Positions 39,760-64,000 of a stretch of 64,000 nt of DNA are shown here, piece after piece (position 1 is the first letter of the stretch; each line of letters opens with the position of its first letter). The stretch is from Trichoplax adhaerens (Eukaryota > Animalia > Placozoa). The notes beneath the pieces are model-generated. The model was not told the DNA's origin and did no database searches. It worked only from the letters and a program-made list of their open reading frames with translations. Location of the stretch: positions 6,006,575 through 6,070,574 of the forward strand of contig NW_002060945.1 of NCBI RefSeq assembly GCF_000150275.1, in the 5' to 3' direction. The position numbers and the translations under genes were made by a program.

Positions 39760-42700
39760 ATGGCTTCTCCTTTCAGCCCAAATCCAGAGATCAAGTACAC
39801 TAAAGTAATTGCAATAAAGATAGTCGATAATATGTCAATGATTAGTTAATTGGAGATTGTTTGACATTATCAATTAACATTGTTTAAGATTTCTTTTTCT
39901 AAGACCTTGTGCCGTACTTGTCTAGACCTTTTTCTTGTCTTTATTCCATCCGGCTTATTAATTTAAGCGGATAGGCATCAATAACACTTAGATGGACTCG
40001 ACTAGTTTTTACAATGTTAGATTAAGGCTATCTATTCACTCCACAGTTGTTATTGCTTTTTGTAGATATTCATTAATAATGAATGGCACGACTCTGTTAG
40101 TGGTAAAACTTTTCCAACTTTTAACCCAGCAACTGGAGAGAAAATTTGCGATATTGCCGAAGGCGATAAGGTATCTCATTTTTTAAAGTATCATATTTAT
40201 TATTTTACTAAACTACAATCAGTAGACATAAACTACGCGTATTAAGTTCATTATAATTGAATGATGATAAAGCGTTCGCATACTACTGTAGTAAAATCGC
40301 CAAACTTGAATGTGGAGATGCTAAGCCGCTTCGCATTTGTAACGACCTACAGTACAGCAATATTATTTTCGTATCAGATATTTCAGTAAAAGTATAAATG
40401 AAATTTATTGCTATCTATCGGTATAAACTATTGTATTCGCACGTTAGTTTTAATTCCATTTTTTCCCAGTTATTAAAGTATCTGAAACGAAATTAAAGAC
40501 ACTGTAGTACGAGATGACTACATCATGTTCAATATGGGCGTGCCAACTCCGAATTAACAAATTATACAGTACTATACGTAACATTAAATTTATTTAGTAA
40601 TAATATTATTAACCGTAAATAATAGTAAGTAGAAAAAAAATCCTTAAGAGTTTGTACCCGCCGTCAGAGCGGATAGTTTTTAGCTTTTAAATAGTATATG
40701 GATATGGATGACTTATTGTAGCACTACTATCCATTATTATCCAACACACTAGTATTTGTACGCAGGGACTACTACTTCCTTTAATAGTCCCTGATTGTAC
40801 GCTACTGTATATCATGAAAGTAGCCCAAAGTTATATGCACGATACACCAACTCAGGCGTGCTCCAAAGAACTGCTAATAGAAATAAGATTATTATTATCT
40901 TTATTGCAAGGTCATGTGTACTTTTTTAGTCCCGTTGATATGCATTCGATTGAACAACTATATCGTAAGAATCTCCTCTAGTAGTGTTCTGTTCAAGTCT
41001 CAATCTACTGCAGTAGTGCATGACATCAGAATATGATTTCGTTGTTTTGAAGAGTATTCAACATGAAAATATAATTCAGTCAAGGTCGCAATGTTAAATA
41101 AATTTTTTACAACTAAGATCCAGCTATATGGTACTCGCATTAAGAGCTGAAAGTAGTTCAATTTTGATTTTTGCATTTATTGTATCGCACTGCAGAGAAT
41201 TATTATGTACCGTCTAATTTACTATGCTTAGTACATTCAAATCACATCATTCATACATGCGTCCGCAGAAATTATATTGAATTATTACTGCCAAGCGAAT
41301 AAAAATACTTCGACTTAATATCTACTTGGGTATTAATAATCTCAGTTACGAGAAAATCATACTCTTAAATACGTAACTTTTGATTGACTTTTTTGATAGG
41401 CTGATATTGATCTTGCGGTTGCTGCAGCCAAGCAAGCCTTCAAGAAAGGAAGTACTTGGCGAACTATGGATGCATCAAAACGTGGTCGCTTGATATCTAA
41501 ATTAGCCGAATTGATGGAAAGAGATCAACAGTACCTAGCGGTAAATACAAAAATTCGTTGATTAAACCTGATAACGTTATTATAAACTGATTTCTACCAT
41601 ATTAAAATCAGTAATAAATCCACTTTTACGACTCGATACAGTATGAAATTGCAGCTCAAATAGTACAAGAGTAATGCATAAAGTATTTTCAATGCAATTT
41701 ATTGTCTATTTACCTAATCCATTCATCGGAATAACTTAAATCATACGTAGTATAAAGAATGGTAATATATTATATAGTACATAGCATGTACGCACTTGCC
41801 TTAGCACTCGACAGCCGATACTGGGATAACACAGTAATTCATGATTTGTTATCGGCATATCGTTATTAATCATTGCTAACGAAAAGGGCTAGTGGCTCTA
41901 TCGATGTTATAGAATCAATCGTTATCATAATATTTATCTTCTTTGAAATGTCTTCAAGCGTGAATATAATCTTATTTACCGTTGTTTGGTGTTAACTTTT
42001 GTTGCTGTAATACTAAACAACAGTCTTTGGAATCCCTCGACAATGGAAAACCAGTCAGAGTAGCCAATTTCGCCGATTTACCGGGAGCGATGCTATGTTT
42101 CAGGTGCGGATTTCAATATCATATCTATTAATGCTATTTGGTATTAAATTAATATAGTACAGTTTATTTTAAAAGACACGTAATTTCGCATATCTATCTT
42201 CTCATGAATACGTACATAGTAGTGCGCTATGAGGATAGTATCAGCGACCTAGTCGCCAATGATGTCCGATATATGCAATCAATCATCATGACATGTGACT
42301 AATATTAATACGATTGCAATTAATCAGTAGAATACTTTCTATCATATTAGGTACTATGCAGGTTGGGCTGATAAAATTCACGGGAAAACCATACCAGTCG
42401 GTAATGTACTGTGTAATATTAATATTATATCGCAATTTATGATAAAAGCATTGAAAATAAACGTATGTTCTCATTCGGAAATTAACACGCAAAGTAACGA
42501 TAAGTCTTATTTGTTGACCTTAGATGGACCTTATATGACTTACACGAGACATGAACCCATTGGAATTTGTGGCCAAATAATTCCGGTAATGAAACATTTT
42601 TATCACTCTATAACTGATGTACTATAAAATTTTAATACTTTGCCTAAAATTCACTTTGAGGATAATCTCAAGCGTATGATTAATTAGCAGGACTCTTTAG

Positions 42701-45018
42701 CTATAAGACTTAGCAATAATTGCTTATAAATGATTCATGCTTACTGTACTTGTTACAATGATCTACAGCACGCGATGCATGTAATATCTAATTGATAAGT
42801 TAGCTAATTCAATGCTAATGGCAATGTTTAATTTTACGAATAACTAGTGGAATTTTCCATTGCTTATGGCTTCTTGGAAATTGGCTCCTGCTTTGGCATG
42901 CGGGAATGTAGTTGTTTTGAAACCTGCGGAACAAACGCCACTTTCTGTACTTTACCTGTGCCAGTTAGCTGTAGAGGTTATTCAGTGGCCTTTAAAGATG
43001 ACCTTTTAGCCTTACATGTAGCTATCCTGCCCTAAAACAAAATTTACTATTTACTGTAGGCTGGATTTCCACCTGGCGTTATTAACGTTGTACCTGGATA
43101 TGGGCCTACCGCCGGTGCAGCAATCAGTAACCATCCTGATATTGATAAAGTAGCATTTACTGGCTCAACTGAGGTATGCTATAGTGTTTTAACCAGTTGT
43201 AAAAGCTCAATTTTATGATATGAATAGACAAATTCTTGAATATCAGCATCCGGATATGAGTGCGTAAGCATATTTCATAATTTCATACTTAATTTGTGTC
43301 TATCCTATGTCATTAAATCACAGGTTGGTCAAATTATCGCACAAGCCGTTGGCGCAAGCAACTTAAAGAAAATTTCGCTTGAATTGGGAGGCAAGAGTCC
43401 AAATATTATTTTTGATGACGTCGATGGTAAGCTGTTTTGTTTTGATATCACAGCTTTTATCCTACATTTTTGTGCAGTTCTTACCTTCACTTAATCCAAG
43501 TATGGCACTGTAGCTACTGTTGACATATTGCGCAAATATTCTATTTTGTTTAGTTGACGAAGCTCTGCAATGGGCTCATTTGGGCGTCTTTTTTAACAAC
43601 GGCCAATGCTGTACTGCCGGCTCCCGTGTCTTTGTCCAGGATGCCATCTACGACGAATTTGTTGCTAAAGCTGTTGCAAAAGCTAAGACTGTTAGAGTCG
43701 GCAATCCATTCGATGATATCGACCAAGGTCCCCAAGTTAGTATTACCAATTGCAATGTCGCGTATTACCTTCACTGTGTACATTATTAGTCCCTCTTCTA
43801 AGATACTAGCTTCGTAATACCGTTGTAAAACGGGTATAGTCGAATCTAGCTTTGCTCAGCACGCTTCGCCGTACAGATCATTACCTAGTGCGCACTGACT
43901 CATTGTAATGGTAGACTGACAGCCCAAAATGCTTACAACTACAATAGTAGACTAACATGCTGGGTAAATTTCCAGATCGATGAAGAACAAATGAAGAAGA
44001 TTCTGGAGCTTATTGACAGCGGCAAAGCTGAAGGAGCTGATATGAAATGCGGTGGAAGCCGACATGGTGATCGTGGTTACTTTATTCAGCCAACTGTATT
44101 CACAGATGTAAAAGATGATATGAGATTCGCAAAGGAAGAAGTATGCTTTACTCTTTGCTTAGCTGCGTAACTATCATTTTTCCAGCTTATGCTCTTTTTA
44201 ACTGTTCTATAATTGCGTAATGATGATCTTAAATATGTATAATATCGATATAATATTTTCTTCAAAAATTAATTTAAAATCGCGCAGATCTTTGGACCTG
44301 TAATGCAAATCTTTAAATTTTCAACAATCGATGAAGTTATCGAGCGTGCTAATAATACAGTCTACGGATTGGCTGCAGCTGTTTTCACTAAAGACATAAA
44401 GAGGGCAATACATGTTTCCAATCACATACGAGCCGGCACGGTTTGGTAAGTCGCATCATATGTTCGAAGTCACCATTGTACTGTACTTTAATCAATTTAT
44501 TGTTAGTTATATTATTAGATGCATCGATAGACATATTTATCTTTAATTGCACCCTGATTACTCTTAATGTTAGTCTGGTTTAGTACCTATTTACTTAATT
44601 CAGTCAAACGTTGAGATTTGGTTGTGCTAGTTTTTATTGAGATTTTTTATTAAGCATGCTTGTGTTATTCGATAGGATCAATTGCTATCATATGACTGCG
44701 TGTCAAGCCCCATTTGGTGGCTACAAGATGTCTGGCTTCGGACGTGAACTGTAAGTACCGTGTACCAACACCGTTTGGTAAATGATGTATTGATTTAATA
44801 TCATATTATAATTTGTAAGATTCTTCAGCATCGATGAAGAGTGCTACTAAACAGGCTGAATACAGTTAAATTTATGTAATTGAGTAATTCGGTTTAGCAT
44901 AATGTATATTTTTTTTTTATCACCCTTAATTAAATATTACAGTGGAGAATATGGGCTTGAACTCTATTCCGAAGTTAAAACGGTCACTATTGCGCTTGAC
45001 TCCTTGGAAGCTAAATAG
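39760..45018 (+). CDS. ALDH1/2-family aldehyde dehydrogenase, copy 1 (494 aa, 14 exons, cytosolic-type, RALDH-like signature)
   Basis: Exons 39760-39804, 40066-40170, 41400-41540, 42024-42103, 42351-42400, 42524-42585, 42848-42976, 43060-43173, 43324-43426, 43554-43735, 43976-44140, 44288-44445, 44676-44750, 44943-45018. Motifs [34 protein letters not shown]. In-frame TGA 30 nt upstream of the ATG. Confidence 0.95.
40763..40793. mobile_element. 31-bp hAT-like mini element in ALDH copy 1 intron 2
   Basis: CAGGGACTA...TAGTCCCTG flanked by tttgtacg / attgtacg, a 7/8 match consistent with an 8-bp TSD. Confidence 0.55.
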
Positions 45019-45887
45019 ATTCATTTTAAACAAATTGTTTACACTTCTTATGTGATATCCGGTAATTTTGGGATTTTTAAGTAAAGGTGATTCCAGTAAA
45101 AACGAACAGGCTAATCTTATAATGCAATTGAACTTCTATTACAACTAATTGTTGTATGACCTACAGTAATTGACTACTATCTATAGTGCAACTTTAATAT
45201 CATGGTCTACATATGTTGTCCTGGTTTACCGTTGAGTTCTGCATTTAAACTACTTCAATTTAAAATCAGTCTAATTGCTGAAACACACTCGAACTGTCAG
45301 ATGATATCCTTCTTGTTAGGATAGCATGTTAACAGCTGGATGGCATATCAGCTGCTTGCTACTATGCAAACTTTACAATCAACGTCAGGCTCTATGCATT
45401 GTAATGAGTTTGGAACTACTTCGGAGGAAAGTCTTGCAGTAGCACACAGATTAACACGATATGCGAATGTCTATCTATCCGTAGTATTACGGTAATTTAC
45501 ATAGTAACTTGGATGCATTCTAATCTTAGTACAGTATGATGGAATACTTGGGCAGCATAATAATCATGATCATAATAGGGCATGTCATGAAAGCTCAACT
45601 AGCTTTAATATGACATGCCCTGCTATCCTGCATTGGCTTTAATTAATTCTATTTTTCTTCAAGATTTCAGCATGTTAATTGATCATGACAGCATAGTAAT
45701 AAGTGCTACTGTAATCTCAAGTATACGAATTTGCCTGTGTGTCATTTCACTGGCAGGCATATCAACTATGCTAGTAGTTCATTCGAGCTTTAGAATACTG
45801 CTGTATATTATGGAAATTAACCTGAACCCTATCATGACGGCTTATATAAGGCATGGATTACACTGTCTATGACAGAATAATCCGCGT

Positions 45888-46295
45888 ACAGTATAGTGTT
45901 GCTCATCATGATGAAATTGATGATAGTTTAGGGCTGTGACGATTTGCCTTATCGTAGTTGAAACAAGATCATGGATGAACGGTACGTCGGGTGGTGTGAC
46001 GCAGGAACGCCCTGCTGTCAATCACGATACACGACGATTTGCCCTATCGTAGTTGAAACAAGATAATGGATGAATTGATACGTTTGGTGGTGTGATGCAG
46101 GCAGGAACAGGGCCATGCCTTGCTGTCAATCACGATACAAATGACAGTATAGCATACTGTATCATGACAAAATTCATGATAGTTTAGTACAGTGACGATT
46201 TGCCTTATCGTAGTTAGTTACAACAAGATAATGGATGAACGGTACGGTACGTCCGGTAGTGTGATGAAGGAACGCCCTGCTGTCAATCAAGATAC
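45888..46295. repeat. Three-copy ~95-105-bp repeat, plus a twice-repeated ~50-bp leader
   Basis: gacgatttgcc(t/c)tatcgtagtt...caagat(c/a)atggatgaa...tgctgtcaatca(c/a)gatac at ~45938-46031, ~46033-46138, ~46194-46295. Confidence 0.9.
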
Positions 46296-46987
46296 CAAAT
46301 TAGATCATCAATCTTGCATTGCCTAATTATTATGATGCATAATTATAGTACATACTGTACACTACTGTATAACCTTGGTATAGTCATAATAATAATAATA
46401 AGGGAAAATTAATGTAATAATAATAATAATAATAGGGGCATATGGTTAATTTTCCCTAATAATAATACTTTAATATCGCAATACAGTACTGTATACTGTA
46501 CTGTACTGTACAATATAATCGATAGCCGTATGTTAATATACTGTACAGTACTGTAGCATGACCTCATCATTATTATGACAATATTATGAGCAAGAATATA
46601 TCATAACAACAAAAAGGCGAATGGCAGTCTGCTAGCTATCTTTAAAAGTTGCTACTGCAAATTCACGATCACTTCGCTTCCTTCCGATCATCAACGATAG
46701 AAATCGATAGTTTTCGGATTGAAGTAGCGCTTTATCAAGTGTGCAGATCATGAACATTGGCATTGAATACTGGATAGCCAATGTTTCATGATCTTATCTT
46801 ATTTTTAATCAATATCGCACTCTGCCTTTAATGACACTTGACTGACGTGAGAGTTTACTAGCTATACGTTATAATTGATCAATAATGATTGATTATTGAT
46901 ATTTTTATCATCGTTATGGTTGTCATCAGTGAATGAGTGTCGTCTGCTGTAGCCGCTTTTGCAAATGCAACATCATTTAACTTCCAT

Positions 46988-47020
46988 CATGGGCTACTAG
47001 TTATTACCTAGTAGTCTATG
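46988..47020. mobile_element. 33-bp hairpin element of the same TIR family
   Basis: CATGGGCTACTAG-ttattac-CTAGTAGTCTATG. Confidence 0.4.
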
Positions 47021-47754
47021 AGTGCATTTGGTTGCAAGTCAACGAATACAGTTCACATTTATATCATCCTTCTTGAACGATAAAAAAAAATCCCAGATTG
47101 ATACAATATTTTAGTATGTCGATCACTGACGTCAACACTTCAAGCAGTAACAACATATTACGTAAATACTATACGTATTTTCGTATCGTCATTTTACAAG
47201 ATGTTGTCAAATATCTAGTGTTTTAATTTACTTTTAACGATGTACACTGCGTTCTGCAGGGGGGTTTTTTTGCAGGACCTTGGATGCATAAGTACTGTGT
47301 CATTGTATATAGCGAATACAGAAGCATTACATGCTTATTTTGCCTTCAACTGTTGTTAAAGGAGAGATGAGTACTTTATTCGTTGTTCAACTAATGGTGC
47401 CATGAATACTGTACTTGGATGTCAATATAACAATTTGCGATGGATTAGTGAGCAATTGAGGACCGAAATTGTAACATTTGCTTCCATTGTATCAGATACG
47501 TGCTAAATTGGATTGTACAATATGGCGGAAAACCGGATCCTTTTTTTCACTTAGTTAATAATACCACATCCTAAACTGGATCGTCGATAACGTTGTAACA
47601 AGTCCTGTTTGATTGTTGACGTATGTTTTTCAACAATGCTACAATAAACAGACTTGGAAACACTCTAGTAGTGATTCTACTATATTTGTTTAGATATACT
47701 GTATCCCGCTGCAGTACAGTATGCTAGTCTTGACTTTTGAATTTTGCCGTAATC

Positions 47755-47972
47755 TAGACCGTCGCTTTATAAAAAGTTCTTACAATACTCAACTGAAACT
47801 ATCATCAACACCCTCACCCCAAAAATGATCGAAATTAATCCTATAAGAATATTCTATTTTTACTTTAATGTAGATCCGTCTCTCTATAAAAAGTTGGTTA
47901 GAATCCTTAGCCAAAACTATTGTCAACACCTCTGCAAAAAAAAAAACACATTGAAATTGATCCCATCAAGAT
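47755..47972. repeat. Diverged two-copy ~115-bp tandem duplication
   Basis: taga(t)ccgtc.ct.tataaaaagtt...aaactat..tcaacacc...gaaatt.atcc at ~47755 and ~47871. Confidence 0.7.
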
Positions 47973-48696
47973 TTGTTATAGAGTCACAGGGTCTACCGTA
48001 TCATAGGGGTAAAGTTTTCTTTCTCTTCGGTACACTCTACGTACCCAACTCAATAATACTTTTAAAAGATGAAGCCAAGCAACCAGGGGAGTCGAAATTC
48101 ATCAGCTGACTCAGTGTGAAGGCGTTCTTGCTGACCCCCTTCTTGAACTGGTTGAACTATTTTATTCCTGTTGCACAAGTTGGCTACACTACAGTCTGTT
48201 CGATTCGTGAACTTTTCTATAGATTTGTGTACACGCCATGTTCCAATTGGAAAGGCCAGCAAAGCATCATCGATGTAAACAAAACCTTAACCTGTACCTA
48301 CAGTACAGTACTGTGTAAACAAACCAGCAAACGAACTGTAGCATGCTACAGTATACTACTGTAGTACTGTACGTTAGCTGCATAGAGTACTGTACAGTCT
48401 GTACTGTACTTTAGTACCTGGTAGTGCCATGGTCGGCTGTACTGTAGTACTGCAGGGTATTGTACTGTACCTCCAGTTAATAAAAAGATCTGCAAACTGT
48501 TTTACCGTTCTCTTCCTTTTCTAACAGGTCAGGGTAAGACACATAAAACTTCGCTCCTTGCAATATTCTCTTTTTCAACCTACTGCAGGTGAAAATAACT
48601 TGCCAATTTAAACTAGTTACTATTTAATATGGATCAATTTCCCTATTTTAGCATTGACTTCTTGTCTTTTTTTACATTAGCGACTGAACTTTCATC

Positions 48697-51600
48697 ATGT
48701 CTTTTGATTCTAATCCAGAAATTAAATATACAAAGGTTAGCTAGCACTGCTGATTACTCGCAATTACAGTAAAAAAAAACATAAAAATCTATAGTTTTAA
48801 AGCGTTCTCAAGTTTACTGTTGTCTCATATACTTCGATTTATACATAATAATAATAATAATAATAATAGAATTAAACAAGCAATGCTGTAGCTCTCGATA
48901 GAATGTCATTTGCAATAGTCTGTAGCTTAAGCTACAGGTAGAGGATATTGATGACTTTGCAATTTTGCCTTAATGGGTCAGTTAATGATCAATTTTGCTG
49001 TACGACAAGTTGTGCAAGCCTTGAAATTCTGAAAGGGCACTGCAGTAGCACAGCAATACGGAAAAGACGGTAACGATTTCTCTTCTTCGATATATTAATG
49101 CATTGAAAAAAAATTTGAAAGATTTATTGTATTCTCTGGCCTTGTTCAAGGGACTATAAATATCATCGACCCAGCCGTCAGTGCAGTACTGGTAGCATAG
49201 TTGTACGTTTTGGGAGCAGTAGAGAACCAAAATTTTGCATCTGCTACGTCTAACGGCGTCGGTTCTCGTTGTACGCCTACGCCTTCAAGCAGTTCTTACA
49301 GCATATTCCTAGTAATAGTAATAATATAGTTATAGATATATATACGTTAATTAAATTAATTGTAACCATTTTGAAAGATACAATCATTGTACTGTAATTG
49401 CCACGCCATCATCAACTGATTACTTTACACAGCAAAATCATGTGGAGAAAGAATTACTAAAGATCTCCATATCCGTAGCGTGTTTATACTAATACAAAAA
49501 TAAATCTGTGTTCAGCATGTACTGATGCATCAACTGATAACATAATTAGGTTCAGTAAATTGTTTTAAAGGTCAAATCATATATACGTATGAACCAACAA
49601 GAAACCTTTTTAGTCCATCTCAACACCGTACAGACGCGTACACCAACAGTGCAATATTTTTGATATATTCCTCCTGACAATCTTTACAATAAAGTAGCGA
49701 ATGGAATAACAATGTATACTAGCAATGTGAACAGTGGCTATTATGGTCAGTAATAGAAAATGATAGATAATAGTTTGGCCTACACCTTTTAAGAGTTAAT
49801 GCCCAAGAGCTCAATTTAGTTAAGATATGATTTTACTGCAATGTTAGATTGAATATCAACTAAGTTATAGGTAATGCTATTCTATCCTAACAGGTTTTCA
49901 TCAATAACGAATGGCATGACTCTATCAGCGGTAAAACTTTTCCAACCATCAATCCTTGTACAGGTGAAAAGATTTGTGATGTTGCTGAAGGTGACAAGGT
50001 AAGCAATTAATTACAAAAGATTGAACCCTTTAATTTCAGGAGAGCAACAATCGCTTATCTGTCATATAGTCATTATATTGTATTTATCATCCACTACTAT
50101 ATCGTAATAGGCTGATGTTGAAATTGCAGTAGAAGCTGCAAAAAAGGCCTTTAAAAAGGGAAGCGTTTGGCGTACCACGAATGCTTCTCAACGTGGTCGT
50201 TTACTAAACAAATTGGCCGATCTAATGGAAAGAGATATAGACTACTTGGCGGTAAATTACAGTACTTATTATATCAATACTTGATATATACTTTCTCCTT
50301 ATAAGCGTTATGCTTAGCCGTAATTTTGAACATAACCTATGACCTATCCATAAAACTTAATTAGGGAAAAGCATATAGATTACCAGTCGATACTCTCATA
50401 CGTGTGTTCATGATAAAATCGAGTTGATTCGTATCACGCAATTTTATGTAAAGATAGTTTTTGCTCAGATATAGACTATAGTTCAAATTCTAAATCGCAA
50501 TTAACTAATTCATCTATGCTTTACGATTATGATTACAATGTTACTCATTTATCATATCTCTTAAATATGAGCTCTTTAACTGCTTAATAAGTTTAGCTTG
50601 TTCCTAATCGTAGTCTTTAGAATCTCTTGACAACGGTAAACCAGTAAGAGTCGCTAAAAGTGCTGATATAACGCTATCAATTGCATGTTTAAGGTAGGCC
50701 AACTATGAATGGGTTGATAATTATGCATGGTTATTAATGAAGTAATTTCGAAAGTCAGGTGATACGATTGCAACTTCTTCTATTTAGGTATTTTGCAGGA
50801 TGGGCTGATAAGATCCATGGCAAGACGATACCAGTCGGTAATTTACTACTAAAATATTTATTTACGAAATACGCATATTTACAATTAATTGTTTAATTAT
50901 TGTTAACCATTGCCATTTGATTCACTAACGGTTTTAACAACAACCTTGTTTAAGATGGACCATATATGACATACACAAGACATGAACCAATTGGTGTCTG
51001 TGGCCAAATAATCCCAGTAAATACGCCTCATTTTAATGTTGACTTAGTTCAAGCCTGTACTGAGCATAATTGCACTCAAGTTGAATTATCAGTACTTTAT
51101 CGCTTTACTTGAATAAATTCAATCTTTAATGACCACTGTTTTCAATTTTATTATAAATAGTGGAACTTTCCAATCCTTATGGCCTCATGGAAATGGGCAC
51201 CTGCTATTGCATGCGGCAATGTTGTTGTAATGAAACCCGCCGAGCAAACGCCTCTCACCGCTTTGTATCTTTGTTCACTTGTTGTAGAGGTAGGATACAA
51301 ATTGGGACTAACTAGTTTATTGACCAATATATGATGTGGAAGTCAACTCTTCGAACGTGCTATACTTCCGTTTTTAACTGGAAACTTTATATATTAATAA
51401 TGTAGGCCGGATTTCCACCAGGTGTTATTAACGTTGTACCAGGCTATGGACCCACTGCAGGTGCAGCTATCACTGGTCATCCTGATGTCGACAAAGTAGC
51501 ATTTACTGGCTCAACTGAGGTTCAAAAAAATTCTACAAGAATTTTATTACGCCGAGTTCAAAGTCGCGACACAAAAATTATGATTAATTCAGTTCATTGG

Positions 51601-53304
51601 AATTGTAGATTGGTCAAATTATCATGAAAGCCGCTGGTGCTTCTAATCTAAAAAAAGTTACGCTGGAATTGGGTGGCAAGAGTCCTAATATCATTTTTGA
51701 TGATGCCGACCGTAAGTTTTCATCATTTTAAAATATAATTTTCATTTACTCCTTTTAATATTTAGTTTTATTTCTTTAGTTTAAAATTGTTACGTCCATA
51801 TTAAGAGATTCCCTTGATAATTGAAGGCGTTGTTAAATTTTTAGTTGATGAAGCGGTGCACTGGTCTCACATAGGCCTCTTTCTCAATCAAGGCCAATGC
51901 TGCTGTGCTGGTACACGTATCTTTGTCCAGGATACTATCTATGACGAATTTGTTGCTCGGGCAGTAGCCAAAGCCAAAGCCATTTCTGTTGGCAATCCCT
52001 TCGATGACGTTGAACAAGGGCCCCAAGTTAGTATAATAACCACTGCTACTTGTGCCATCTCTACACAACACTAATCTTGTTACTAACTGTAAATTAAAAT
52101 TTCGGCCTATACGCCGTCCAATCATTAAATAGATTTAATGATAACTTTAAATTGTAATGGTGCATTCTTATCGTAGCTACTGAAGTAAGCCATTTTGTTA
52201 TTGAATTATGCATATTTAATTATAAGGGTTAAGGTTAACATTTCTATACTGCAACGACGTTAAGCACGATTTGCGCTATTATAGTTAACAGATTACGTTA
52301 AATTGTACTTACTACCTCTTAAAACAACCTATAGGTCGACGAAGACCAGTTTAATAAGATTCTAGAACTTATTGAAAGCGGTAAAAGTGAAGGAGCTAAC
52401 ATGAAATGCGGTGGATGTCGTTACGGTAGTCGTGGTTATTTCATTCAGCCAACTGTATTCACGGATGTACAAGATAATATGAGAATCGCAAAGGAAGAAG
52501 TGCGCATTGCATTTTGTTTAGCAGTATACCTATCTCATATACAGTTATATTATAACACTAAAATAATCTATAAATATAAATCTCATAGATTGACATATTT
52601 TTTATTGCTATCACGCAGATATTTGGACCTGTTATGCAAATTTTTAAATTTTCAACACTTGATGAAGTCATCGAGCGTGCTAACGATACGGCTTACGGAT
52701 TAGCTGGGGCTGTTTTCACTAAAGATTTGAAGAAGGCCTTGCATGTTTCTAATCATTTGAGAGCTGGCACTATTTGGTAAAATGCGTTTTTAAGCTCTGC
52801 TACTTAACTTTAACTCTACAGCACAATTATTAAGTAGAATTACTTCATTGCAGTATCTACTGAACTCCTGCTGCATTACTGTAACAAATGCACAACCAGC
52901 AGTAATTTATTAGTTACTATTTAATGCTTACAGGGTCAATTGCTATGATGTCTTTGCCTCTCAAGCACCTTTCGGCGGTTTCAAGATGTCTGGTATTGGG
53001 CGTGAATGGTAAGTACAATTACATGTTATTACTATTATGTATATGTGTATTAGATCTTACGAAACGTTTTTAAAGCCACAGCAGTTTTTACAGTAATTCT
53101 GATAGAAGTAGGAGTATCTTGTTGATAAATAATTTTCTACACTGCTAAACAGTGCAATATCAATCCTGTTAATTCATTCGATCTAAAAATCTATACTAAC
53201 TTTCTCCGTATAATTATAAATTTATTAGTGGAGAATACGCACTTCAACTTTATACTGAAGTCAAGACAGTTACCGTTGCCTTGGATTGCCAAGAAGCTAA
53301 ATAA
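48697..53304 (+). CDS. ALDH1/2-family aldehyde dehydrogenase, copy 2 (14 coding exons, cytosolic-type, ALDH2-like signature)
   Basis: [13 protein letters not shown]|VFINNEWH..., with the same intron positions as copy 1. Motifs GQCCCAGTR and [16 protein letters not shown]; ends LDCQEAK*. An in-frame TGA lies between the upstream acceptor (48680) and the ATG. Confidence 0.95.
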
Positions 53305-54953: not shown

Positions 54954-57900
54954 ATGATGATCATCTCTGGAGTGAGACGTATAAACATCGGTAATCTCCA
55001 TCGGATTTCAAGGTGTTGGCTAAGCTCGAGAATGGCTGAAGTGACGTTTAATCCCAATCCAGAAATCAAATATAAGAAGGTATCATAGGAAATTGATGGC
55101 AAAAATCATTTTTCTGCCAACGTCTTATGATTGCATATGTTGAAGCTTTCCATATTTTTACTTTGACTTGGATAAACGATCAGTTTGTCCATGAGAAACT
55201 TATTCAATTACTGCACTGTACAGTGTACAGTATGTCGAAAAGATGGATAGGCTGCATCATCTTTTAATATCACTTTGACAGTGATATTGCCATCCAGAAA
55301 TATCATTCCCAATATAATGTATGCACCGTAGATCAACTGGATGCACTCGGTTGCAGTGGCGTATGTCCATAAAATGATCCTGATGTGAGATATTGCAGGA
55401 GTGAGTCAGCAAATTCTCGGCGGTACCATCATTACTCCATTTTGCAGCAGAATTGCACACAGGGATCAACATGGATATCCGACTTCTACAATATTAAGTG
55501 ATTTTTACCTCTAGCTGCAGATTTTAAGCCATCTAATACAGTCTCCAACTAAAATGGACTATGAATTTGCATTACAGATTCTCTTCTTCTACTATACTGT
55601 ACAGTAGTTTATGTACTTGTATGTGTCGAAGTTTCTACTTGTAAACTGTGCTGATAATCCTAGATCATAACGATAGGTCAAGTCTGCTTTATCGCTCTCT
55701 ATCGATAGTAGCGCAGCAAACAGGCAAAGTTTTTTTCTTGCAAATTCCGCCATCCAGAGATCACAGTTGTAAAATAACCTTGCTTTTACACTGGGAACAG
55801 CAATTTAATTAATCGTTAGTAAAGATTCAGAGTTGCTCGCTGATGCGAATGGTTGTGCTGTTTTCTCCTCGAAGAGTAGCGCAAACACAAGAACTAGAAT
55901 TGAAAATTAGTATACTAAGCATTTACTTCATCACTATTGTAAATAATTTATTTTTGATACTGACTAATACAGTACTTGGAATGTATTTTGTAGATCTTTA
56001 TCAATAATGATTGGCATGATGCAGTTAGTGGTAAAGTCTTTCCAACTATCAATCCGTCAACTGGTGAAGTAATTTGCGAAATTGCTGAAGGAGATGCGGT
56101 AAGTCAATGGCCAAAGGTATCCATGAATAAGATCTAACATCATTATCCGCTTTCTTCAAGTTTATAATTAAACCTTGTGGTGCATCTTGTGGTTGACTAG
56201 TGATACTTTTCATAAAATACAGCTCGCGCTTTGCTACTAGTTAATTGACTTTTATTGAAGGTTGTAGTGTACATACATTAGCAGAGTAATTGAATGATCG
56301 TGTGAAGCAATGCCGAAGAGGTCTTAAGACTTTCCTTTTTATAAGATTCTAACTGTAATAGTAACGGATCGTTTGTAACTTAGCAGCGTTGTACTATTCA
56401 GATATTGAAGTTGAATAATTCCTAGACACGACACAGACAAGCATTTTGATAACATAACATGTTGATAATTTGTAATCTATGATTATTAGAACTTAGAACT
56501 TATCGATTATAATTATAATTATCAGACATGATATTACCCTACGGTTCGGACTTAGTGTATTAGTGTAACGATACATATATTTGAATGATTATTGGCGACA
56601 AACCTTGAGCAATGCCGATATTACAAATGATTCGAAATTGAATAGTTTAACAATAATTAATATAAGACTAAGAATGTTGCAGTGCAATATATGCAGTTTC
56701 TATAATCAGCTTGATCGAACTGTGAAATATCAATGTGTCAGGATAGTTAACGCAATCGATAGATGACGACGAAGGAATGCTTATATCAATTGTTGTTCGC
56801 CAAGTATGCTTACGTAATCCTATGTTTCCAATGTCAAATGGAAAAGTATTTCCAAAATTTTCCTTTTATTCGTCTATAGAAAAAGAGCGAATGAATTAGT
56901 TTTTAGATCCAATCGATAGCTTAAGCAAATGCTATACAATCTTTGAAGACAGCTTAACAATGAGACTATTACAGAATACATTATTGCATTAGGTCCAGGA
57001 ATAGCCAAATTTTATACTCTATAATTACTAGTAAATATACTAATCCCTGTATTACTTGTACCAATAATTCAGGCCGATGTTGATCTCGCTGTCAAAGCTG
57101 CTAAAGATGCCTTTAAGAAAGGAAGTCCATGGAGAACAATGAATGCATCGAAACGTGGATTACTGATGAATAAATTAGCTGATCTAATCGATAGGGACAG
57201 AAAATACTTGGCTGTAAGTTTTAATCCAGCGATTACTTTCTTTGCATGATTATGACTTTACTTTTTCCTGATAAGTGCAGTATTTGTATCTCATATACCT
57301 GTAATATTCAAACTAGCTTATGTTATAATACAATAATAAACGGCTTGATTAAACAATAACCTTACTATGAAATTACTACTCCAAATTACATTTGGCAATG
57401 AAATATTATTATCGTAATTGGTAAAATTCTCATAGGAGTTAGAAACACTGGATAATGGCAAACCAGTCAGAAATGCTTATCTTGGAGATTGTCAAGGAAT
57501 TATTAATGTGTTAAGGTAAAATAATTTGATAGGCTTCAATTAAGCATTTCACGATATTGTACAATGAAAAATGTTCAACAAAAGAGTAACTTGCAAATTA
57601 CCCTCAGATATTATGCTGGATGGGCTGATAAGATTCATGGTAAAACCATTCCAATTGGTAAGTCATACATCTGTTTTTTAACTAGCTTGTAATTTCTCAT
57701 ATAACTATTCGTACTTTGTCTTATCCATCGTCTTGAGTTATTATAACTACGAATGTACTTCTAATTATAATCATTCACAGATGGAGCCTTCATGTGTTAT
57801 ACTCGCCATGAACCGGTTGGCGTTTGTGGCCAAATCATTCCTGTAAGGCTGAAATGTAATGTTTCGTCTATTTACCATTGCTGACTATACTTGATGTTGG

Positions 57901-60368
57901 ATTGTCCAGCTATAATTTGCTGTACACTTTATTAAACTACAAGACTTTAATACGTTCTGCTCATATTGATACGCTAAGCAAGATAATTCTGTAAATAGCA
58001 TATATTTTCCCCAGCGGTTATTTTCTCAGAGATAGCTTCGAATCTACTACTATTAATTAGTGTGTATTACCTTATAGCGATAGCAGGAACGTTGCAAATA
58101 TTATATGCTACTATTTCCTAAATAGCCATAGCTTTACAATTATTGACTAGTGGAATTATCCGATGGCAATGGCCGGATGGAAATTTGGTCCAGCTCTTGC
58201 TTGCGGTAATACAATTGTCATGAAACCAGCAGAGCAAACCCCTCTATCCGTCCTTTATATCTGTAGCTTAATTATCGAGGTAATAACTGATATTCATCAC
58301 ATCAAGACACCACAATTACATTTAAAATGATAAATACTACAGATGAAATTTATTAATCTAGATTCACTTAAATTTAGGCTGGTTTCCCTCCTGGCGTAGT
58401 CAATGTTGTTCCAGGATACGGTCCTACAGCTGGTGCTGCAGTTGCTAGACATCCAGATATTGATAAAGTTGCTTTCACTGGCTCTACCGAAGTAGGAAAA
58501 ATTATTATGGCAGCTGCCGGCGAAACTAATCTCAAGAAAGTAACCTTAGAATTAGGCGGAAAAAGTCCACATATCATTTTTGATGACGCTGACAGTATGT
58601 TAAGAAATAGACAATTTTATCAATTCGTATTCTCATACTGTAATGAAGAATTATTTTATTATAAAACGATGTTAACTGGGTAACTATTACATACGCAATT
58701 ATAGTTGATGAAGCAGTTAAAAATGCACATGAGGGCTTATTTGCCAACCATGGTCAAAATTGCTGTGCTGGCTCCCGAGTCTACGTACAAGACACCGTCT
58801 ACGATGAATTTGTAGCCAAGAGCGCAGCGTTAGCCGAAAAGAGAGTTGTCGGTGATCCATTTACAAATGTCCAACAAGGACCACAGGTATGCAATAAAAA
58901 TATTCTCGTTTTAAACAGCATATCTACTGACACTAAGTAAATAACAAGAAATACTATACAATCATTGACGATATGGATAACTTTTTCTATACTTTACTGT
59001 AATCACTTTAAATCAGATAGACTCTAATAATCAACGATAACATAAATGTGTTGCGATTAATTTCCACTCGTTCCAAATTCATTGAAGATCGATCAAGAAC
59101 AATTCAATAAAATTATGGGTCTAATTGAAAGTGGAAAAGAACAAGGGGCAACCCTTAAATGCGGCGGTAAGCGCTTTGGTACACAAGGCTTTTTCGTAGA
59201 GCCCACCGTTTTCGCTGACGTTAAAGATGATATGAGAATTGCTAGAGAAGAGGTATTTTAATAAGTGATGACTCAATATTGTTTTAGTTCATAGTTCAAT
59301 AGCTGTATAATAGTAAGTCTGAGGAGTAGACAAATAGCCAATTAATTATCTTGTGAGATCTGTTACCGAGATTGAATATTCTACTTACTATAGATCTTTG
59401 GACCCGTCATGCAAATTTTAAAGTTTTCAACCATTGATGAAGTTATCGAAAGAGCTAATGACACTCAATACGGATTAGCAGCAGGAGTCCATACGAAGGA
59501 TATGAAGAGAGCATTACATGTTTCCAATCATATAAGAGCTGGATCAGTCTGGTAAGACACCAAGCAATTTAATTTTACATTAAGAGATTTATGTACTGGA
59601 TATATCAAAGTTACCTTAAAACTACTCTAATGTCTTTTTTTTTCGCTAAGGATAAACACGTATGACTACGTTACTGCACAAACACCATTTGGTGGTTACA
59701 AAATGTCTGGAATCGGTAGAGAATTGTAAGTTAGAACAATACCTGAAATCAAAAATTAATAATGAAATAAAGTAGTATAAATTGTCTGTCGACACGGAAG
59801 TAAACTATTCGCAATATAGATTTTTTAATCCAAAATATAATGTGATATAATGTATTTGCTCTTAGCATAATTATTACTTGAGATAGAAGTATTGGAGATC
59901 TTTATTAGACAATAGTATCTGCAATGATATATCACATGTACGCGTATATACAATCATATATCACGAAACATGCAATCCTTAATTTAATTATTTATCGTAG
60001 CTACATTATGAATAATAAATTTGAAATTACGTATGTAGTTACATGCTGCAGAATATCTACACCATCATTTGTCTTAACTTTGCTATAAATTTATATTACT
60101 ATGGTTAGCTCTTATACATATTGCTAATACAGTAATTCTAGTTACCACTATAGATTGTAAATTAATATTTATTTACATATGTGATTACACACTGGAGAAT
60201 ATCTGCAGATCATAGCTATACTTTAAACGATAAATTCGATCTGATCAAATATGATGTTTAATAGCGCTAAGTAGAAAAATTTCTTTTAATAGGGGCCCCT
60301 ATGCTTTGGAACATTACACCGAAGTGAAAACTGTTACCGTCGCTCTTGATTCAAAAGCCGCTAAGTAA
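54954..60368 (+). CDS. ALDH1/2-family aldehyde dehydrogenase, copy 3 (13 coding exons; putative mitochondrial presequence; internal ATG at 55032)
   Basis: Exon 1 (54954-55079) gives [42 protein letters not shown]. Motifs [14 protein letters not shown] (uninterrupted), [33 protein letters not shown]; ends LDSKAAK* at 60368. Confidence 0.93.
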
Positions 60369-62514
60369 AGACTGATTTTTAGGGAAATTATCATTCACAT
60401 CATCAATAGTAAAAGCTATCTCTACACTTACTACATATTATTTTACTATTCGATTCTTACGTTGTAAGTACTGTCCACCATTTGCACTGTTTGCTTGTCT
60501 ATGGTACGCATATACAGTACCTTTACTTCGCTAAGCAATACAACATGTATCATTTTAGATACACCTTTTCTCGTATTTAGAACCATTGCATAAAAACTAT
60601 TATTCTACAATAAGACTAAGCTTTTAACAAAATTCTAGCCTTGCTACTACTGAGTTTTTATATCGGTACGTAGCCCTACGCCGAAATACTAATTAAAATT
60701 TTTAACAAAAATAGAACCAATTCATTGTATTGTCTCATGTACGGCGATCGCCATACACGCAGTCAAATTTCTTTCATTTGCAGCTAAACCTTTCATTGCA
60801 TATTATATCCAAGCAGCAAATGATACTAAGTTTGCGATATTCATCATCACAAGCATGTCGGTCAAGTTGTTAATGGCTTATAGTTGCTTTTAGCTCTCTA
60901 TTAGCTGCTTACGTACTGTCTACAGTATGTCAATATTTTCCTATTTACTTTTGATGGGAAAAGGCGTAAGAACTTTTTACTGGTGTTCTATAGCATTTAA
61001 TGAACTCCAGCAGTACATTCCTAATTATGGTAATGTTTGCTAAAGAGAGCTAAAGAGCAAAAGATCATCGAAAGAAAACTTTTTCTCTTAGTATTTAAGT
61101 TACTATCTACGATGTTCTTTTTATTTAGTTCATTAATCCTTATTTACTGTAGCATACCATCAAGTTCAACTTTATTCCACCTGCAAGAGTCCCTACGATT
61201 TGAACTTTACCGCCAATTAATGATACAGTACCATTTACTTTGTAAATGTCGTTTAGTTAAATTCGCTGCAATCAGATAGTTCATATGCTAATAGTATGGC
61301 TAATAAAGTAAGCATGAATACTGTTTAATAATTATCCCATTTTATCTCCTTCATCGCCTTTCTTCAGTACTTACTTTACTTTACTATGGTAAGGGTCATA
61401 AAGCAAGAAACAGGAGAAATTGAACATTATTTACGGTTCCTGTGGGTTTGTTACAGACAGAGACCAGAAAAATTCGCAACTGATTTATAACAGTAAACTC
61501 GGAATTATTCTTTTCTAGACAAGGATGAAATCCTCGCGCAATTTACTAGACTTCCTGACTATAAAGTATTCTATTCTCGATATTATTGTGGTTAATCAAT
61601 ACCGAGTGCAAGAGATGACGACCTGATTTGCGCGTATAAAAATTTCGGACTATCCTTTCGTCAGCGAGTATTAAATCCACGCTGGATTTGCAATACTTAT
61701 TGACAATAAAGCTTTCACTATATTTTCGTGGTTATTAAGTAATGCCGAGTCCAGGACATAACGTCGATTAACTTATGGCTTGATCCATAATCTGATTCAA
61801 TAATTGTATACAATACCTTCTACTCAGACTATCAAAGGTATTTGTTATACCATAGTCATTCCTATTAGTGCATTGCAGTTCAGCCAGCATAGTAACCTGG
61901 AGAAACTGTATTCTCGATAGAAATGAATTACTTAATGACATAGTAAATCCTTTGGGTGTACCGGTTATTATATTATAAGCCATTTTATTACAATTTTTCT
62001 TCAAGAAATGAGAGACCAAGCAAGGATTAACTAAAAAACTGTCATTTCAGCAACATTTATAGAACAAAAATTCAAATCTGTCCAACTCGAATGTCGAGTG
62101 TATCCTTTCTCTTTAGTAGCCCCTGATGGCTATACTCCCAATGAACGCCAAGTCAATTATATAATTAGTCGAGATTACATCTGGACTGTCTAACATTTCA
62201 CTTTTAAGTTAACAATCTAGTCAGGCTTGACCATAGAAGTTAAAAAATGACCTCGATCTTTACTATAGGGGGTAAAAGAAAAAATTGTACCTCTATAAAC
62301 TCAACTATGGACTGTACTGTAGTCTGCAGACAGCCATGTTGATTCAAAATATCAAGATAAAGTAAAGGATAAAACACTGAGCAGAATCAGTGCCGGCTAC
62401 AAACCCTAGTATACTGGGAGACAGCGAGCGTCGAAAAGCTATTTAGGACAACAAGCAAACCAGCAAGGCTGCACAAAAATTGCAAGATAAAGGCTACGGA
62501 GTAAAAGCAAGACC

Positions 62515-64000
62515 ATGGCGGAACCAACATTTAACCCAAAACCTGAGATTCAATTTACAAAGGTACGATCATTTTGTGACGCAATTGTAGCTTATAATTG
62601 GGAATAACAGTCTATGAAAGGATGCAATGATTAAGAAAGTAGAAGAATCATGTCTCACTTTATGCTAGTTGACTGTAAGTTTTCCTGCACTTGCATAGCT
62701 GAGTTTTTCTATAGGCATGCAATCGAAGTCGATTGAAGCATGCAATTATGAAATACAAGGCTATGATGAAGATGTTATGATAGAAAGTAGTTGTGTTATA
62801 TAACAACGAGTATCATGTCTACGTTTTATACTGTCTAAATTTTTCCTTTTACAATAACAATGTCGTACCATTTGTTTCGGAGGTACAAGGTTATGATGAA
62901 GATGTGATGATGAAAAGTAGTTATGTAATACACGTAAATATCATATCTACATTTTATACTATCGGAGTTTTCCTATATATTACGAATGACATCGTTACAT
63001 TCGATTGGCAAGAATAACGCTACGATGACGATACGATAGATAGTAGCTGTACAAGATCGAAGAGTTGTAGTATAAATTATATTTCAATTTTTCTCATCTC
63101 TGCACGAGATGCAGTTGCAGTTAAGAGACTTGTTTAATGCTTTTACTCAATTTTAGGCGTATATTTCTATTGACACTATGTTCTACTCCGTAGATTTTTA
63201 TCAATAATGAATGGCATGATGCCGTCAGTGGCAAGACTTTTCCAACTATTAATCCAACAAATGGCGAAGTCATTTGTCAAGTAGCTGAAGGAGACGCGGT
63301 TTGTAAATACCATGTAGATTTTATAGGTTTAACTAGATCTTGCAAGAAATATAAAATATAAACGATTTATATATTGTGCACCCTGCTATAACAAACATCA
63401 AGCAAAGTGTACTATCTATATTTGATTATATCATACAGGACTATGTAAGATATATGATATACTATGATATGCATTACTGTAATATGTATACTGTACTATG
63501 ATAAAGACTGCTATTACAGAATACAATATTGCATTAGGTCCAGGAATAGCCAAATTTTATACGCTATAATTACTAGTAAATACACTGATCTCTGTATTAC
63601 TTGTACCAATAATTCAGGCCGATGTTGATCTCGCTGTCAAAGCTGCTAAAGATGCCTTTAAGAAAGGAAGTCCATGGAGAACAATGAATGCATCGAAACG
63701 TGGATTACTGATGAATAAATTAGCTGATCTAATCGATAGGGACAGAAAATACTTGGCCGTAAGTTTTAATCCAGCGATTACTTTCTTTGCATGATTATGA
63801 CTTTACTTTTTCCTGATAAATGCAGTATTTGTATCTCATATACCTGTAATATTCAAACTAGCTTATGTTATAATACAATAATAAACGGCTTGATTAAACA
63901 ATAACCTTACTATGAAATTACTACTCCAAATTACATTGGTAATGAAATATTATTATCGTAATTGGTAAAATTCTCATAGGAGTTAGAAACACTGGATAAT
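62515..64000 (+). CDS. ALDH1/2-family aldehyde dehydrogenase, copy 4 (5' part; truncated by window end)
   Basis: Exons 62515-62562 ([16 protein letters not shown]), 63194-63298, 63618-63758, and 63980 onward (ELETLDN). In-frame TAA 27 nt upstream of the ATG. Confidence 0.9.
62753..62934. repeat. Short direct repeat in ALDH copy 4 intron 1
   Basis: tacaagg(c/t)tatgatgaagatgt(t/g)atgat..aaagtagtt at ~62754 and ~62884. Confidence 0.75.
63511..64000 (+). repeat. Near-identical copy of 56966-57456 (ALDH copy 3 intron 2 end, exon 3, intron 3, exon 4 start)
   Basis: About 9 differences in ~490 bp by eye, including the intronic sequence. Confidence 0.95.

What the first reader, a model, noticed from the sequence alone, without database searches (positions are those of the whole stretch)
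39760..64000. Tandem ALDH1/2 array whose paralogues carry different substrate-channel signatures, including a RALDH-like copy
Seen (human ALDH2 mature numbering): copy 1 has G124 (42084), T303 (43613), T459 (44695). Copy 2 has L124 (50674), C303 (51904), F459 (52953). Copy 3 has G124 (57496), C303 and V459 (59670). Catalytic C302 and E268 are intact in all three. Established: positions 124/303/459 line the substrate entry channel. ALDH2 has M124/C303/F459 (narrow, small aldehydes); ALDH1A retinaldehyde dehydrogenases have G124, T/I303 and V/L459 (wide), and QCCTAGSR is the ALDH1A2 loop. Inference: one locus encodes a divided aldehyde-handling toolkit, with copy 1 a candidate retinoic-acid-producing enzyme in an early-branching animal (Trichoplax RXR is reported to bind 9-cis RA) and copy 2 tuned to short aldehydes.
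Basis: partly seen in the sequence, partly recalled or inferred. Interest (0 to 1): 0.8.

Follow-up and report, generated by a model that had tools for sequence, protein, structure and literature searches.

The report
Placozoan tandem ALDH1/2 genes, diverged channels
Four neighbouring aldehyde dehydrogenase genes in a Trichoplax-like genome arose by local duplication and differ at the three residues that size the substrate channel, but the "retinal dehydrogenase-like" copy is a convergent look-alike, not a relative, of vertebrate retinoic-acid-making enzymes.

Summary
On the + strand lie three intact ALDH1/2 genes (c1 39760-45018, c2 48697-53304, c3 55032-60368). A fourth (from 62515) runs into an assembly gap at the window end. 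Residues 124/303/459 (human ALDH2 numbering) are G/T/T in c1, L/C/F in c2 and G/C/V in c3, at the stated codons, and catalytic and cofactor residues are intact.

- The copies are each other's closest relatives (ML clade 97/98).
- They share a one-residue deletion that every other aligned sequence covering that site lacks.
- AU tests reject c1 grouping with vertebrate ALDH1A (p 5e-5) and c2 with ALDH2 (p 4e-59).

So c1's RALDH2-like signature is convergent. c2 keeps the likely ancestral narrow signature, while c1 and c3 changed to smaller residues. c3 has the most altered channel.

No other ALDH1/2 gene was found in the 105.6 Mb assembly. No RPE65/BCO carotenoid oxygenase signal was found either, which weakens an endogenous retinal-to-RA route.

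Channel-size switching after ALDH1/2 duplication was described by Sobreira et al. 2011, as summarised in PMC8160307. This is a new member of a known kind. Substrate profiles remain untested.

The parts
39760..45018 (+). ALDH1/2 copy c1, 14 coding exons, 494 aa. Exons: 39760-39804, 40066-40170, 41400-41540, 42024-42103, 42351-42400, 42524-42585, 42848-42976, 43060-43173, 43324-43426, 43554-43735, 43976-44140, 44288-44445, 44676-44750, 44943-45018. Channel signature G124 (42084) / T303 (43613) / T459 (44695).
   Evidence: Hand-built GT-AG model with an intact ORF. Pfam Aldedh matches exon by exon. PDB alignments to ALDH2 and ALDH1A2. In-frame stop upstream of the ATG, so no presequence.
48697..53304 (+). 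ALDH1/2 copy c2, 14 coding exons, 492 aa. Exons: 48697-48735, 49894-49998, 50111-50251, 50614-50693, 50788-50837, 50955-51016, 51161-51289, 51406-51519, 51609-51711, 51845-52026, 52335-52499, 52619-52776, 52934-53008, 53229-53304. Signature L124 (50674) / C303 (51904) / F459 (52953).
   Evidence: It is 78.7% identical to c1, with dN/dS 0.07-0.10 and dS 1.3-2.0. It has the shortest branch of the three.
55032..60368 (+). ALDH1/2 copy c3, 13 coding exons, 495 aa. The intron between exons 8 and 9 of c1/c2 is absent. Exons: 55032-55079, 55994-56098, 57073-57213, 57436-57515, 57608-57657, 57781-57842, 58151-58279, 58378-58594, 58705-58886, 59088-59252, 59394-59551, 59651-59725, 60293-60368. Signature G124 (57496) / C303 (58764) / V459 (59670), plus G120, Y170, A173, E292, A296, N301, T455.
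   Evidence: About 72% identical to c1 and c2. Sister to (c1,c2) in the ML tree.
54954..55031 (+). In-frame upstream extension of c3. Two ATGs (54954, 54957) would add 26 residues that are Arg-rich with no acidic residues. This is a possible mitochondrial presequence. c1, c2 and c4 have nothing equivalent.
   Evidence: Its use as a start codon and any targeting function are untested.
62515..64000 (+). ALDH1/2 copy c4, partial. Exons 62515-62562, 63194-63298, 63618-63758, and 63980-64000, which runs into a 2,671-N assembly gap. No ALDH exons lie beyond the gap.
   Evidence: It matches c3 at 94 of 105 residues.
63511..64000 (+). Tract 98.2% identical to c3 56966-57456 (end of intron 2, exon 3, intron 3, start of exon 4). 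It has a sharp 5' edge: exon 2 just upstream is only 80.7% identical.
   Evidence: blastn. Either gene conversion or a mis-join next to the gap.

Best explanation
The locus holds the whole ALDH1/2 complement of this placozoan genome. It consists of four tandem, head-to-tail genes for NAD-dependent aldehyde dehydrogenases with short, cytosolic-type N-termini. They arose by DNA-level duplication within this lineage, after its split from the line leading to vertebrate ALDH1A and ALDH2.

All readable copies keep the full catalytic machinery and are under strong purifying selection, so they are working enzymes. They have diverged at the residues lining the substrate entry channel:
- c2 keeps the large, ALDH2-like mouth/neck/bottom set (L/C/F). 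This is probably the ancestral narrow channel, suited to short aldehydes.
- c1 (G/T/T) replaced these with small residues, as did c3 (G/C/V, plus A173 and A296), probably along with c4. By analogy with ALDH1 versus ALDH2, this should open the channel to bulkier aldehydes.

The most likely role is a size-partitioned detoxification and metabolism set for dietary and lipid-derived aldehydes. c1's resemblance to RALDH2 is convergence.

Shown here: gene structures, residues, monophyly, selection, and the absence of other ALDH1/2 genes. Inferred: channel widths and substrate classes.
For: - Gene models are intact and the signature residues are as stated.
- Catalytic and cofactor residues are conserved.
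- The three copies share all intron positions except for one intron loss in c3, and they sit in tandem.
- The ML tree (LG+C20) gives a Trichoplax clade at 97/98 and (c1,c2) at 97/95. Vertebrate ALDH2 and ALDH1A are each at 100.
- AU tests reject c1+ALDH1A (delta lnL 70.7, p 5e-5) and c2+ALDH2 (delta lnL 94, p 4e-59).
- A one-residue deletion near ALDH2 position 337 is shared by c1-c3 and is absent from the vertebrate sequences, the bacterial P0272 and the fungal-like sequence (the other bacterial fragment, P0270, ends before it).
- dN/dS for c1-c2 is 0.07-0.10 with saturated dS.
- Genome-wide exon searches find only the window copies above 60% identity; the next best hits are at or below 46%. 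The other ALDH loci are clearly more divergent, with local matches of 27-57%.
- The 124/459/303 signature-to-channel-size rule, and repeated switching after duplication, are summarised in PMC8160307, citing Moore 1998 and Sobreira 2011.
- Parsimony: C303 and F459 are shared by c2, ALDH2 and (at 303) one bacterial relative, so T303/T459 in c1 and V459 in c3 are derived.
Against: - No channel volume was computed and no substrate was assayed.
- The three-residue rule is a correlate, not a proof of specificity.
- The phylogeny lacks cnidarian, sponge, other placozoan and invertebrate bilaterian sequences. The duplications could therefore predate placozoans, and "lineage-specific" is shown only relative to vertebrates.
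- G124 is shared by c1 and c3, so the ancestral state at the mouth is ambiguous.
- c4 cannot be read past exon 4.
- No expression data were examined.
Confidence: 0.75

Rival explanations
1. c1 (or c3) is a genuine retinaldehyde dehydrogenase. It would make all-trans or 9-cis retinoic acid, or a related apocarotenoid acid, that feeds the Trichoplax RXR. Retinoid synthesis would then exist outside Bilateria, through a convergently widened ALDH1/2.
For: - c1 has G124 and T303 within the same QCCTAGSR motif as ALDH1A2.
- All three signature residues in c1 are small, and c3 is also wide-type.
Against: - c1 is not orthologous to ALDH1A.
- Residue 459 is Thr, and H457/T303 make the c1 channel more polar than the Val/Leu-lined RALDH channel.
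- T303 is common in the family.
- No RPE65/BCO carotenoid oxygenase signal was found in the assembly even at E<=10, so there is no evident endogenous source of retinal.
- There is no RAR; only four nuclear receptors are present (PMC5624297).
- Wide channels in ALDH1 enzymes also serve lipid aldehydes.
Confidence: 0.12
2. The signature differences are neutral or nearly neutral drift among redundant, broadly specific paralogues. Under this view the array is kept for dosage or for differential expression, not for substrate partitioning.
For: - Sites 124, 303 and 459 vary across ALDH1/2 generally. Vertebrate ALDH2 shows M, L, N and V at 124 and F, L and C at 459.
- Tandem ALDH1 expansions kept mainly for capacity are known, for example beaver Aldh1a1 (PMC8656434).
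- No functional data exist for these genes.
Against: - The duplicates are old (dS saturated) yet under strong purifying selection, which argues against simple redundancy.
- All three signature sites differ between the closest pair, c1 and c2, and the changes run in a consistent large-to-small direction.
- c3 combines several further large-to-small changes at pocket positions 120, 173 and 296.
Confidence: 0.13

Closest known systems
Vertebrate ALDH1A2 (RALDH2, retinal dehydrogenase 2; PDB 6alj, 1bi9)
   Same: - Same ALDH1/2 fold family.
- c1 shares G124, T303 and the QCCTAGSR segment around the catalytic Cys.
- Cytosolic-type N-terminus with the EIKYTK-IFINNEW motif.
   Different: - Not orthologous: clade and AU tests.
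- T459 rather than L459.
- H457/M458 rather than N457/A458.
- A one-residue deletion near position 337.
- Activity on retinal is unknown.
Vertebrate mitochondrial ALDH2 (PDB 1zum, 1o02, 3n80)
   Same: - The highest overall identity to the Trichoplax copies (about 67-69% for c1).
- c2 has the narrow-type signature L/C/F. L124 also occurs in some vertebrate ALDH2 sequences.
   Different: - c2 has no mitochondrial presequence: it has a short N-terminus with stops upstream.
- It is not orthologous (AU p 4e-59).
- It sits in a tandem array with wide-type paralogues.
Lineage-specific ALDH1/2 duplicates that switched substrate-entry-channel size (Sobreira et al. 2011 PNAS, as summarised in PMC8160307; e.g. 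amphioxus and ascidian ALDH1 duplicates)
   Same: The process is the same. [quoted passage not shown]
   Different: - Here the switch is in a placozoan and runs narrow-to-wide in two paralogues independently.
- The genes are still adjacent.
- I could not read the 2011 paper, which is not held. So I cannot say whether these very genes were already in its data set.
Beaver Aldh1a1 tandem expansion (PMC8656434)
   Same: A local expansion of ALDH1-type genes whose copies were modelled to differ in substrate-entry-channel accessibility. It was interpreted as broadened aldehyde detoxification.
   Different: That expansion is recent and lies inside true ALDH1A1. The Trichoplax copies are ancient (dS saturated) and make up the animal's entire ALDH1/2 set.

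Membership tests
Aldehyde dehydrogenase superfamily (Pfam PF00171) | Sequence match to the Aldedh profile above the gathering score | tested here: met
   Exon-by-exon matches of the window copies up to 99.5 bits, against a cut-off of 23.
Aldehyde dehydrogenase superfamily (Pfam PF00171) | Catalytic Cys302, general base Glu268, Asn169, and NAD-binding Lys192, Glu399 and Gly245/Gly250 | tested here: met
   All are conserved in c1, c2 and c3. c4 is not readable there.
ALDH1/2 clade (class 1/2 tetrameric ALDHs) | Closest relatives are ALDH1 and ALDH2 enzymes, and the genes fall inside that clade | tested here: met
   Best PDB matches are ALDH2 and ALDH1A2. c1 is about 67-69% identical to vertebrate ALDH2. 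In the tree the copies group with ALDH2+ALDH1A to the exclusion of the bacterial and fungal-like sequences (87/91).
ALDH1A retinaldehyde dehydrogenases (c1 as candidate) | Orthology: groups with ALDH1A1/2/3 in phylogeny | tested here: not met
   c1 is sister to c2 inside a Trichoplax clade (97/95 and 97/98). The AU test rejects c1+ALDH1A (p 5e-5).
ALDH1A retinaldehyde dehydrogenases (c1 as candidate) | Wide-channel signature: small residue at 124 (Gly/Ala), Thr/Ile/Val at 303, Val/Leu at 459 | tested here: inconclusive
   G124 and T303 fit. Residue 459 is Thr, which is small but polar and was not seen in the ALDH1A sequences sampled. No channel volume was computed.
ALDH1A retinaldehyde dehydrogenases (c1 as candidate) | Oxidises all-trans or 9-cis retinal to retinoic acid | not testable with these tools
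   This needs recombinant enzyme kinetics.
Mitochondrial ALDH2 (c2 as candidate) | Orthology with ALDH2 | tested here: not met
   The AU test rejects c2+ALDH2 (delta lnL 94, p 4e-59).
Mitochondrial ALDH2 (c2 as candidate) | N-terminal mitochondrial presequence | tested here: not met
   c2 starts 13 residues before the IFINNEW core, and in-frame stops lie upstream. Only c3 has a possible upstream extension.
Mitochondrial ALDH2 (c2 as candidate) | Narrow-channel signature: Met/Leu124, Cys303, Phe459 | tested here: met
   c2 has L/C/F. L124 also occurs in three of the ten vertebrate ALDH2 sequences sampled.
Canonical retinoic-acid pathway (genomic context) | A carotenoid cleavage oxygenase (RPE65/BCO family, PF03055) to supply retinal | tested here: not met
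   No candidate anywhere in the 105.6 Mb assembly at E<=0.001 or at E<=10. Caveat: the search is six-frame and exon by exon, and the assembly has gaps.

The most novel reading that the evidence does not exclude
One of the wide-channel paralogues (c1 or c3/c4) has convergently become a dehydrogenase for retinal or another dietary apocarotenal or isoprenoid aldehyde. Its acid product would be the natural ligand of the Trichoplax RXR. That would give a nuclear-receptor ligand-synthesis step in an animal that has no RAR and no detected BCO, fed by algal apocarotenoids rather than by its own carotenoid cleavage.
Probability: 0.12. Interest if true: 0.7.

Novelty: new member of a known kind. Interest (0 to 1): 0.33.

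Why it matters
Trichoplax RXR binds 9-cis-RA at nanomolar levels, and diet changes the response (PMC5624297). No source of a natural ligand is known. This work gives exact gene models and shows that the animal's only ALDH1/2 genes sit in one array with one narrow-type and at least two wide-type channels. That yields three concrete enzymes to express and assay.

The work also corrects the tempting reading that c1 is an early RALDH. The resemblance is convergent. It adds a non-bilaterian example to the known pattern of channel-size switching after ALDH1/2 duplication, here with the duplicates still adjacent. For annotation, it warns against naming c1 "retinal dehydrogenase 2" or c2 "mitochondrial ALDH2" on motif similarity alone.

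Tried and rejected
- **Full-length placozoan protein ids.** I searched the 1.84-billion representative library with c1 exon 10 by reference. It returned only fragments at or below 67% identity and no placozoan protein.
- **Exons plus a full-length scaffold as a profile query.** MAFFT scrambled the fragments unless at least five clean scaffolds were used. A local HMM simulation showed that such a profile would still rank the Trichoplax proteins below rank 120. I therefore did not spend the third word-index search.
- **Naming unnamed fragments close to c1.** They turned out to be unnamed metagenome proteins; the two whose contigs I examined lie in bacterial-type gene contexts. I used them only as outgroups.
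- **Sobreira et al. 2011.** It is not held by DOI or by PMC id. I relied on the summary in PMC8160307.
- **Position 124 via PDB.** The 26-aa exon 4 did not reach ALDH2 chains. I anchored it through the full alignment instead.
- **Literature on Trichoplax plus ALDH1A, carotenoid oxygenase or aldehyde dehydrogenase.** Nothing specific was found.
- The spliced proteins have no reference, so they were not handed to any database search, family scan, structure prediction or fold search. Tool searches were done exon by exon, by reference. The joined translations were assembled only inside scripts from /data/window.fa, for identities, alignment, dN/dS and the tree. As a result, no 3D model or channel volume was obtained.
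- **A further ALDH1/2 gene or pseudo-exons elsewhere.** Rejected for the window and for the genome.
Full report
**What the DNA is.** The window is G000:C1412:6006575-6070574 of a 105.6 Mb, 1,414-contig assembly. It is AT-rich and intron-rich. It is not human.

**Observation.** Three-frame reading of the + strand and inspection of every junction gave complete gene models with canonical GT-AG introns and uninterrupted reading frames.
- c1: 39760-45018, 14 exons, 494 aa.
- c2: 48697-53304, 14 exons, 492 aa.
- c3: 55032-60368, 13 exons, 495 aa.
- c4: starts at 62515 and can be read through exon 3 and 21 nt of exon 4. A 2,671-N gap begins immediately after window base 64000, and no ALDH exon follows it.

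Intron positions and phases are the same in c1-c3, except that c3 lacks the intron between exons 8 and 9. This points to DNA-level tandem duplication. No other ALDH fragment lies in the window.

**Signature residues.** In human ALDH2 mature numbering they are exactly as reported, at the reported codons: c1 G124/T303/T459, c2 L124/C303/F459, c3 G124/C303/V459. Numbering rests on three checks:
- HMMER alignments to solved human ALDH2 chains for 303 and 459.
- A full-length alignment anchored on Cys302 for 124. The 26-residue exon 4 alone did not reach ALDH2 in the PDB search.

Cys302, Glu268, Asn169, Lys192, Glu399 and the Rossmann glycines are conserved in all three. All nine vertebrate ALDH1A2 sequences have G/T/L. 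ALDH2 sequences are mostly M or L, C, F. ALDH1A2 chain 6alj shows the same QCCTAGSR segment as c1. The rule that 124 (mouth), 459 (neck) and 303 (bottom) set the size of the substrate entry channel is summarised in PMC8160307.

**Relationships.** The joined proteins have no reference, so all database and family searches were made exon by exon, by reference. The joined translations were built only inside scripts from the window file. They were never sent to a search, family, fold or structure tool; that joined step was left out.

Reference sequences came from two word-index searches seeded with fragments found earlier. These gave vertebrate ALDH2 and ALDH1A2/ALDH1A1. I added two bacterial-type metagenome relatives and one fungal-like fragment as outgroups.

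- Identities: c1 and c2 are 78.7% identical, and c3 is about 72% identical to either. c1 is about 67-69% identical to vertebrate ALDH2.
- ML tree (LG+C20+F+G4, 28 rows, 521 columns): the three copies form one clade (97/98), c1 and c2 are sisters (97/95), and vertebrate ALDH2 (100/99) and ALDH1A (100/100) lie outside.
- Independent support: c1-c3 share a one-residue deletion near position 337 that is absent from every vertebrate sequence, the bacterial P0272 and the fungal-like sequence; the second bacterial fragment (P0270) ends before that site.
- Selection: dN/dS between c1 and c2 is 0.07-0.10 with dS of 1.3-2.0, and dS to c3 is saturated. The duplicates are old and constrained.

**Direction of change (parsimony).** C303 and F459 are shared by c2, ALDH2 and (at 303) a bacterial relative. 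So T303/T459 in c1 and V459 in c3 are derived, and c2, which also has the shortest branch, keeps the narrow-type set. G124 is shared by c1 and c3, so the state at the mouth is ambiguous. c3 carries further large-to-small or polar changes at pocket positions (G120, Y170, A173, E292, A296, N301, T455). It is at least as strong a wide-channel candidate as c1. Using standard residue volumes, the three signature side chains sum to about 292 cubic angstroms in c1, 309 in c3 and 465 in c2. The comparison values are 461 for M/C/F and 343 for G/T/L. This is my arithmetic, not a model of the channel.

**Genome context.**
- Exon searches of the whole assembly find only the window copies above 60% identity; the next best matches are at or below 46%. 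The other Pfam-positive ALDH loci are clearly more divergent, with local matches of 27-57%. The array is therefore the entire ALDH1/2 complement.
- None of c1, c2 or c4 has room for a presequence, because in-frame stops lie upstream. c3 has two upstream in-frame ATGs that would add a 26-residue Arg-rich, acid-free extension.
- The RPE65/BCO carotenoid oxygenase profile finds nothing in the assembly at E<=0.001 or E<=10. The same tool recovers ALDH exons well. With the caveats of exon-wise search and assembly gaps, this argues against an endogenous carotenoid-to-retinal step.
- PMC5624297 documents high-affinity 9-cis-RA binding by the Trichoplax RXR, physiological effects at nanomolar doses, dependence on algal diet, and a receptor set of only RXR, HNF4, COUP-TF and ERR. 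That paper does not mention any ALDH.

**Interpretation.** The best-supported reading is a lineage-specific tandem family of working ALDH1/2 enzymes (cytosolic-type N-termini in c1, c2 and c4; c3 may carry an upstream presequence) that has partitioned channel geometry. There is one conservative narrow-type enzyme (c2) and at least two independently widened ones (c1, and c3 with its near-twin c4). The likely use is handling aldehydes of different size from algal food and lipid peroxidation. c1's likeness to RALDH2 is convergent.

That c1 or c3 oxidises retinal or another apocarotenal is not excluded. I give it about 0.12, because of the polar Thr459/His457 in c1, the frequency of T303 in the family (33 of 142 fragments), and the missing BCO. 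Pure drift among redundant copies is the other rival, at about 0.13. It sits poorly with ancient, strongly constrained duplicates whose changes run consistently from large to small.

**Novelty.** Switching between small and large channels after ALDH1/2 duplication, within a single metazoan ALDH1/2 clade with a narrow-channelled ancestor, is the published thesis of Sobreira et al. 2011 as summarised in PMC8160307. I could not read the original, so I cannot say whether these genes were in its data set. This locus is a new, or newly detailed, member of that known kind. Its points of interest are that the duplicates are still adjacent, that they are the animal's only ALDH1/2 genes, and that they give testable candidates for the unknown source of an RXR ligand.

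**Limits.**
- No invertebrate or other placozoan sequences could be brought in. The age of the duplications is therefore bounded only relative to vertebrates.
- There is no structure model, no channel volume, no expression data and no enzymology.

**Earlier scan notes.** The 98% tract between c3 and c4 was confirmed. The c3 upstream extension was confirmed as sequence only.

Noticed in passing
window 63511-64000 vs 56966-57456: c4 is 98.2% identical to c3 at DNA level across the end of intron 2, exon 3, intron 3 and the start of exon 4. Exon 2 just upstream is only 80.7% identical (35 of 153 coding nt differ in exons 1-2, against 1 of 162 afterwards). The tract runs straight into the N gap. 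It is either a gene-conversion tract or a mis-join at a gap edge.
   Followed up: partly
window 54954-55031: Only c3 has in-frame upstream ATGs (54954, 54957). They would add a 26-residue Arg-rich extension with no acidic residues, which looks like a mitochondrial presequence. c1, c2 and c4 have in-frame stops just upstream of their ATGs. If it is used, the wide-channel copy rather than the ALDH2-like copy would be the mitochondrial one.
   Followed up: partly
window 58378-58594: c3 has lost the intron that splits exons 8 and 9 in c1 and c2, giving a single 217-nt exon. All other intron positions and phases are shared.
   Followed up: yes
window 25778-28051 (+): A single uninterrupted 757-aa ORF encodes a complete alpha-N-acetylglucosaminidase (NAGLU_N, NAGLU TIM-barrel and NAGLU_C domains; E 2e-145). 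An apparently intronless gene is unusual in this intron-rich region.
   Followed up: partly
L008 6001-7163 (metagenome contig ERZ25039587:contig_65678); also L007: Metagenome contigs with compact, bacterial-type gene neighbourhoods carry ALDH genes 62-68% identical to the Trichoplax copies. That is as close as vertebrate ALDH2 is. The one on L008 is split into 237-aa and 54-aa pieces. It suggests ALDH1/2-type enzymes in bacteria, possibly by transfer.
   Followed up: no
whole genome G000: There is no RPE65/BCO-family (PF03055) signal anywhere in the assembly, even at E<=10, so the animal may lack any carotenoid cleavage oxygenase.
   Followed up: partly
window 45800-46330: The c1-c2 intergenic region contains repeated ORF-like units (similar peptide strings recur on both strands around 45.84-46.33 kb), which suggests a local tandem or inverted repeat.
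   Followed up: no
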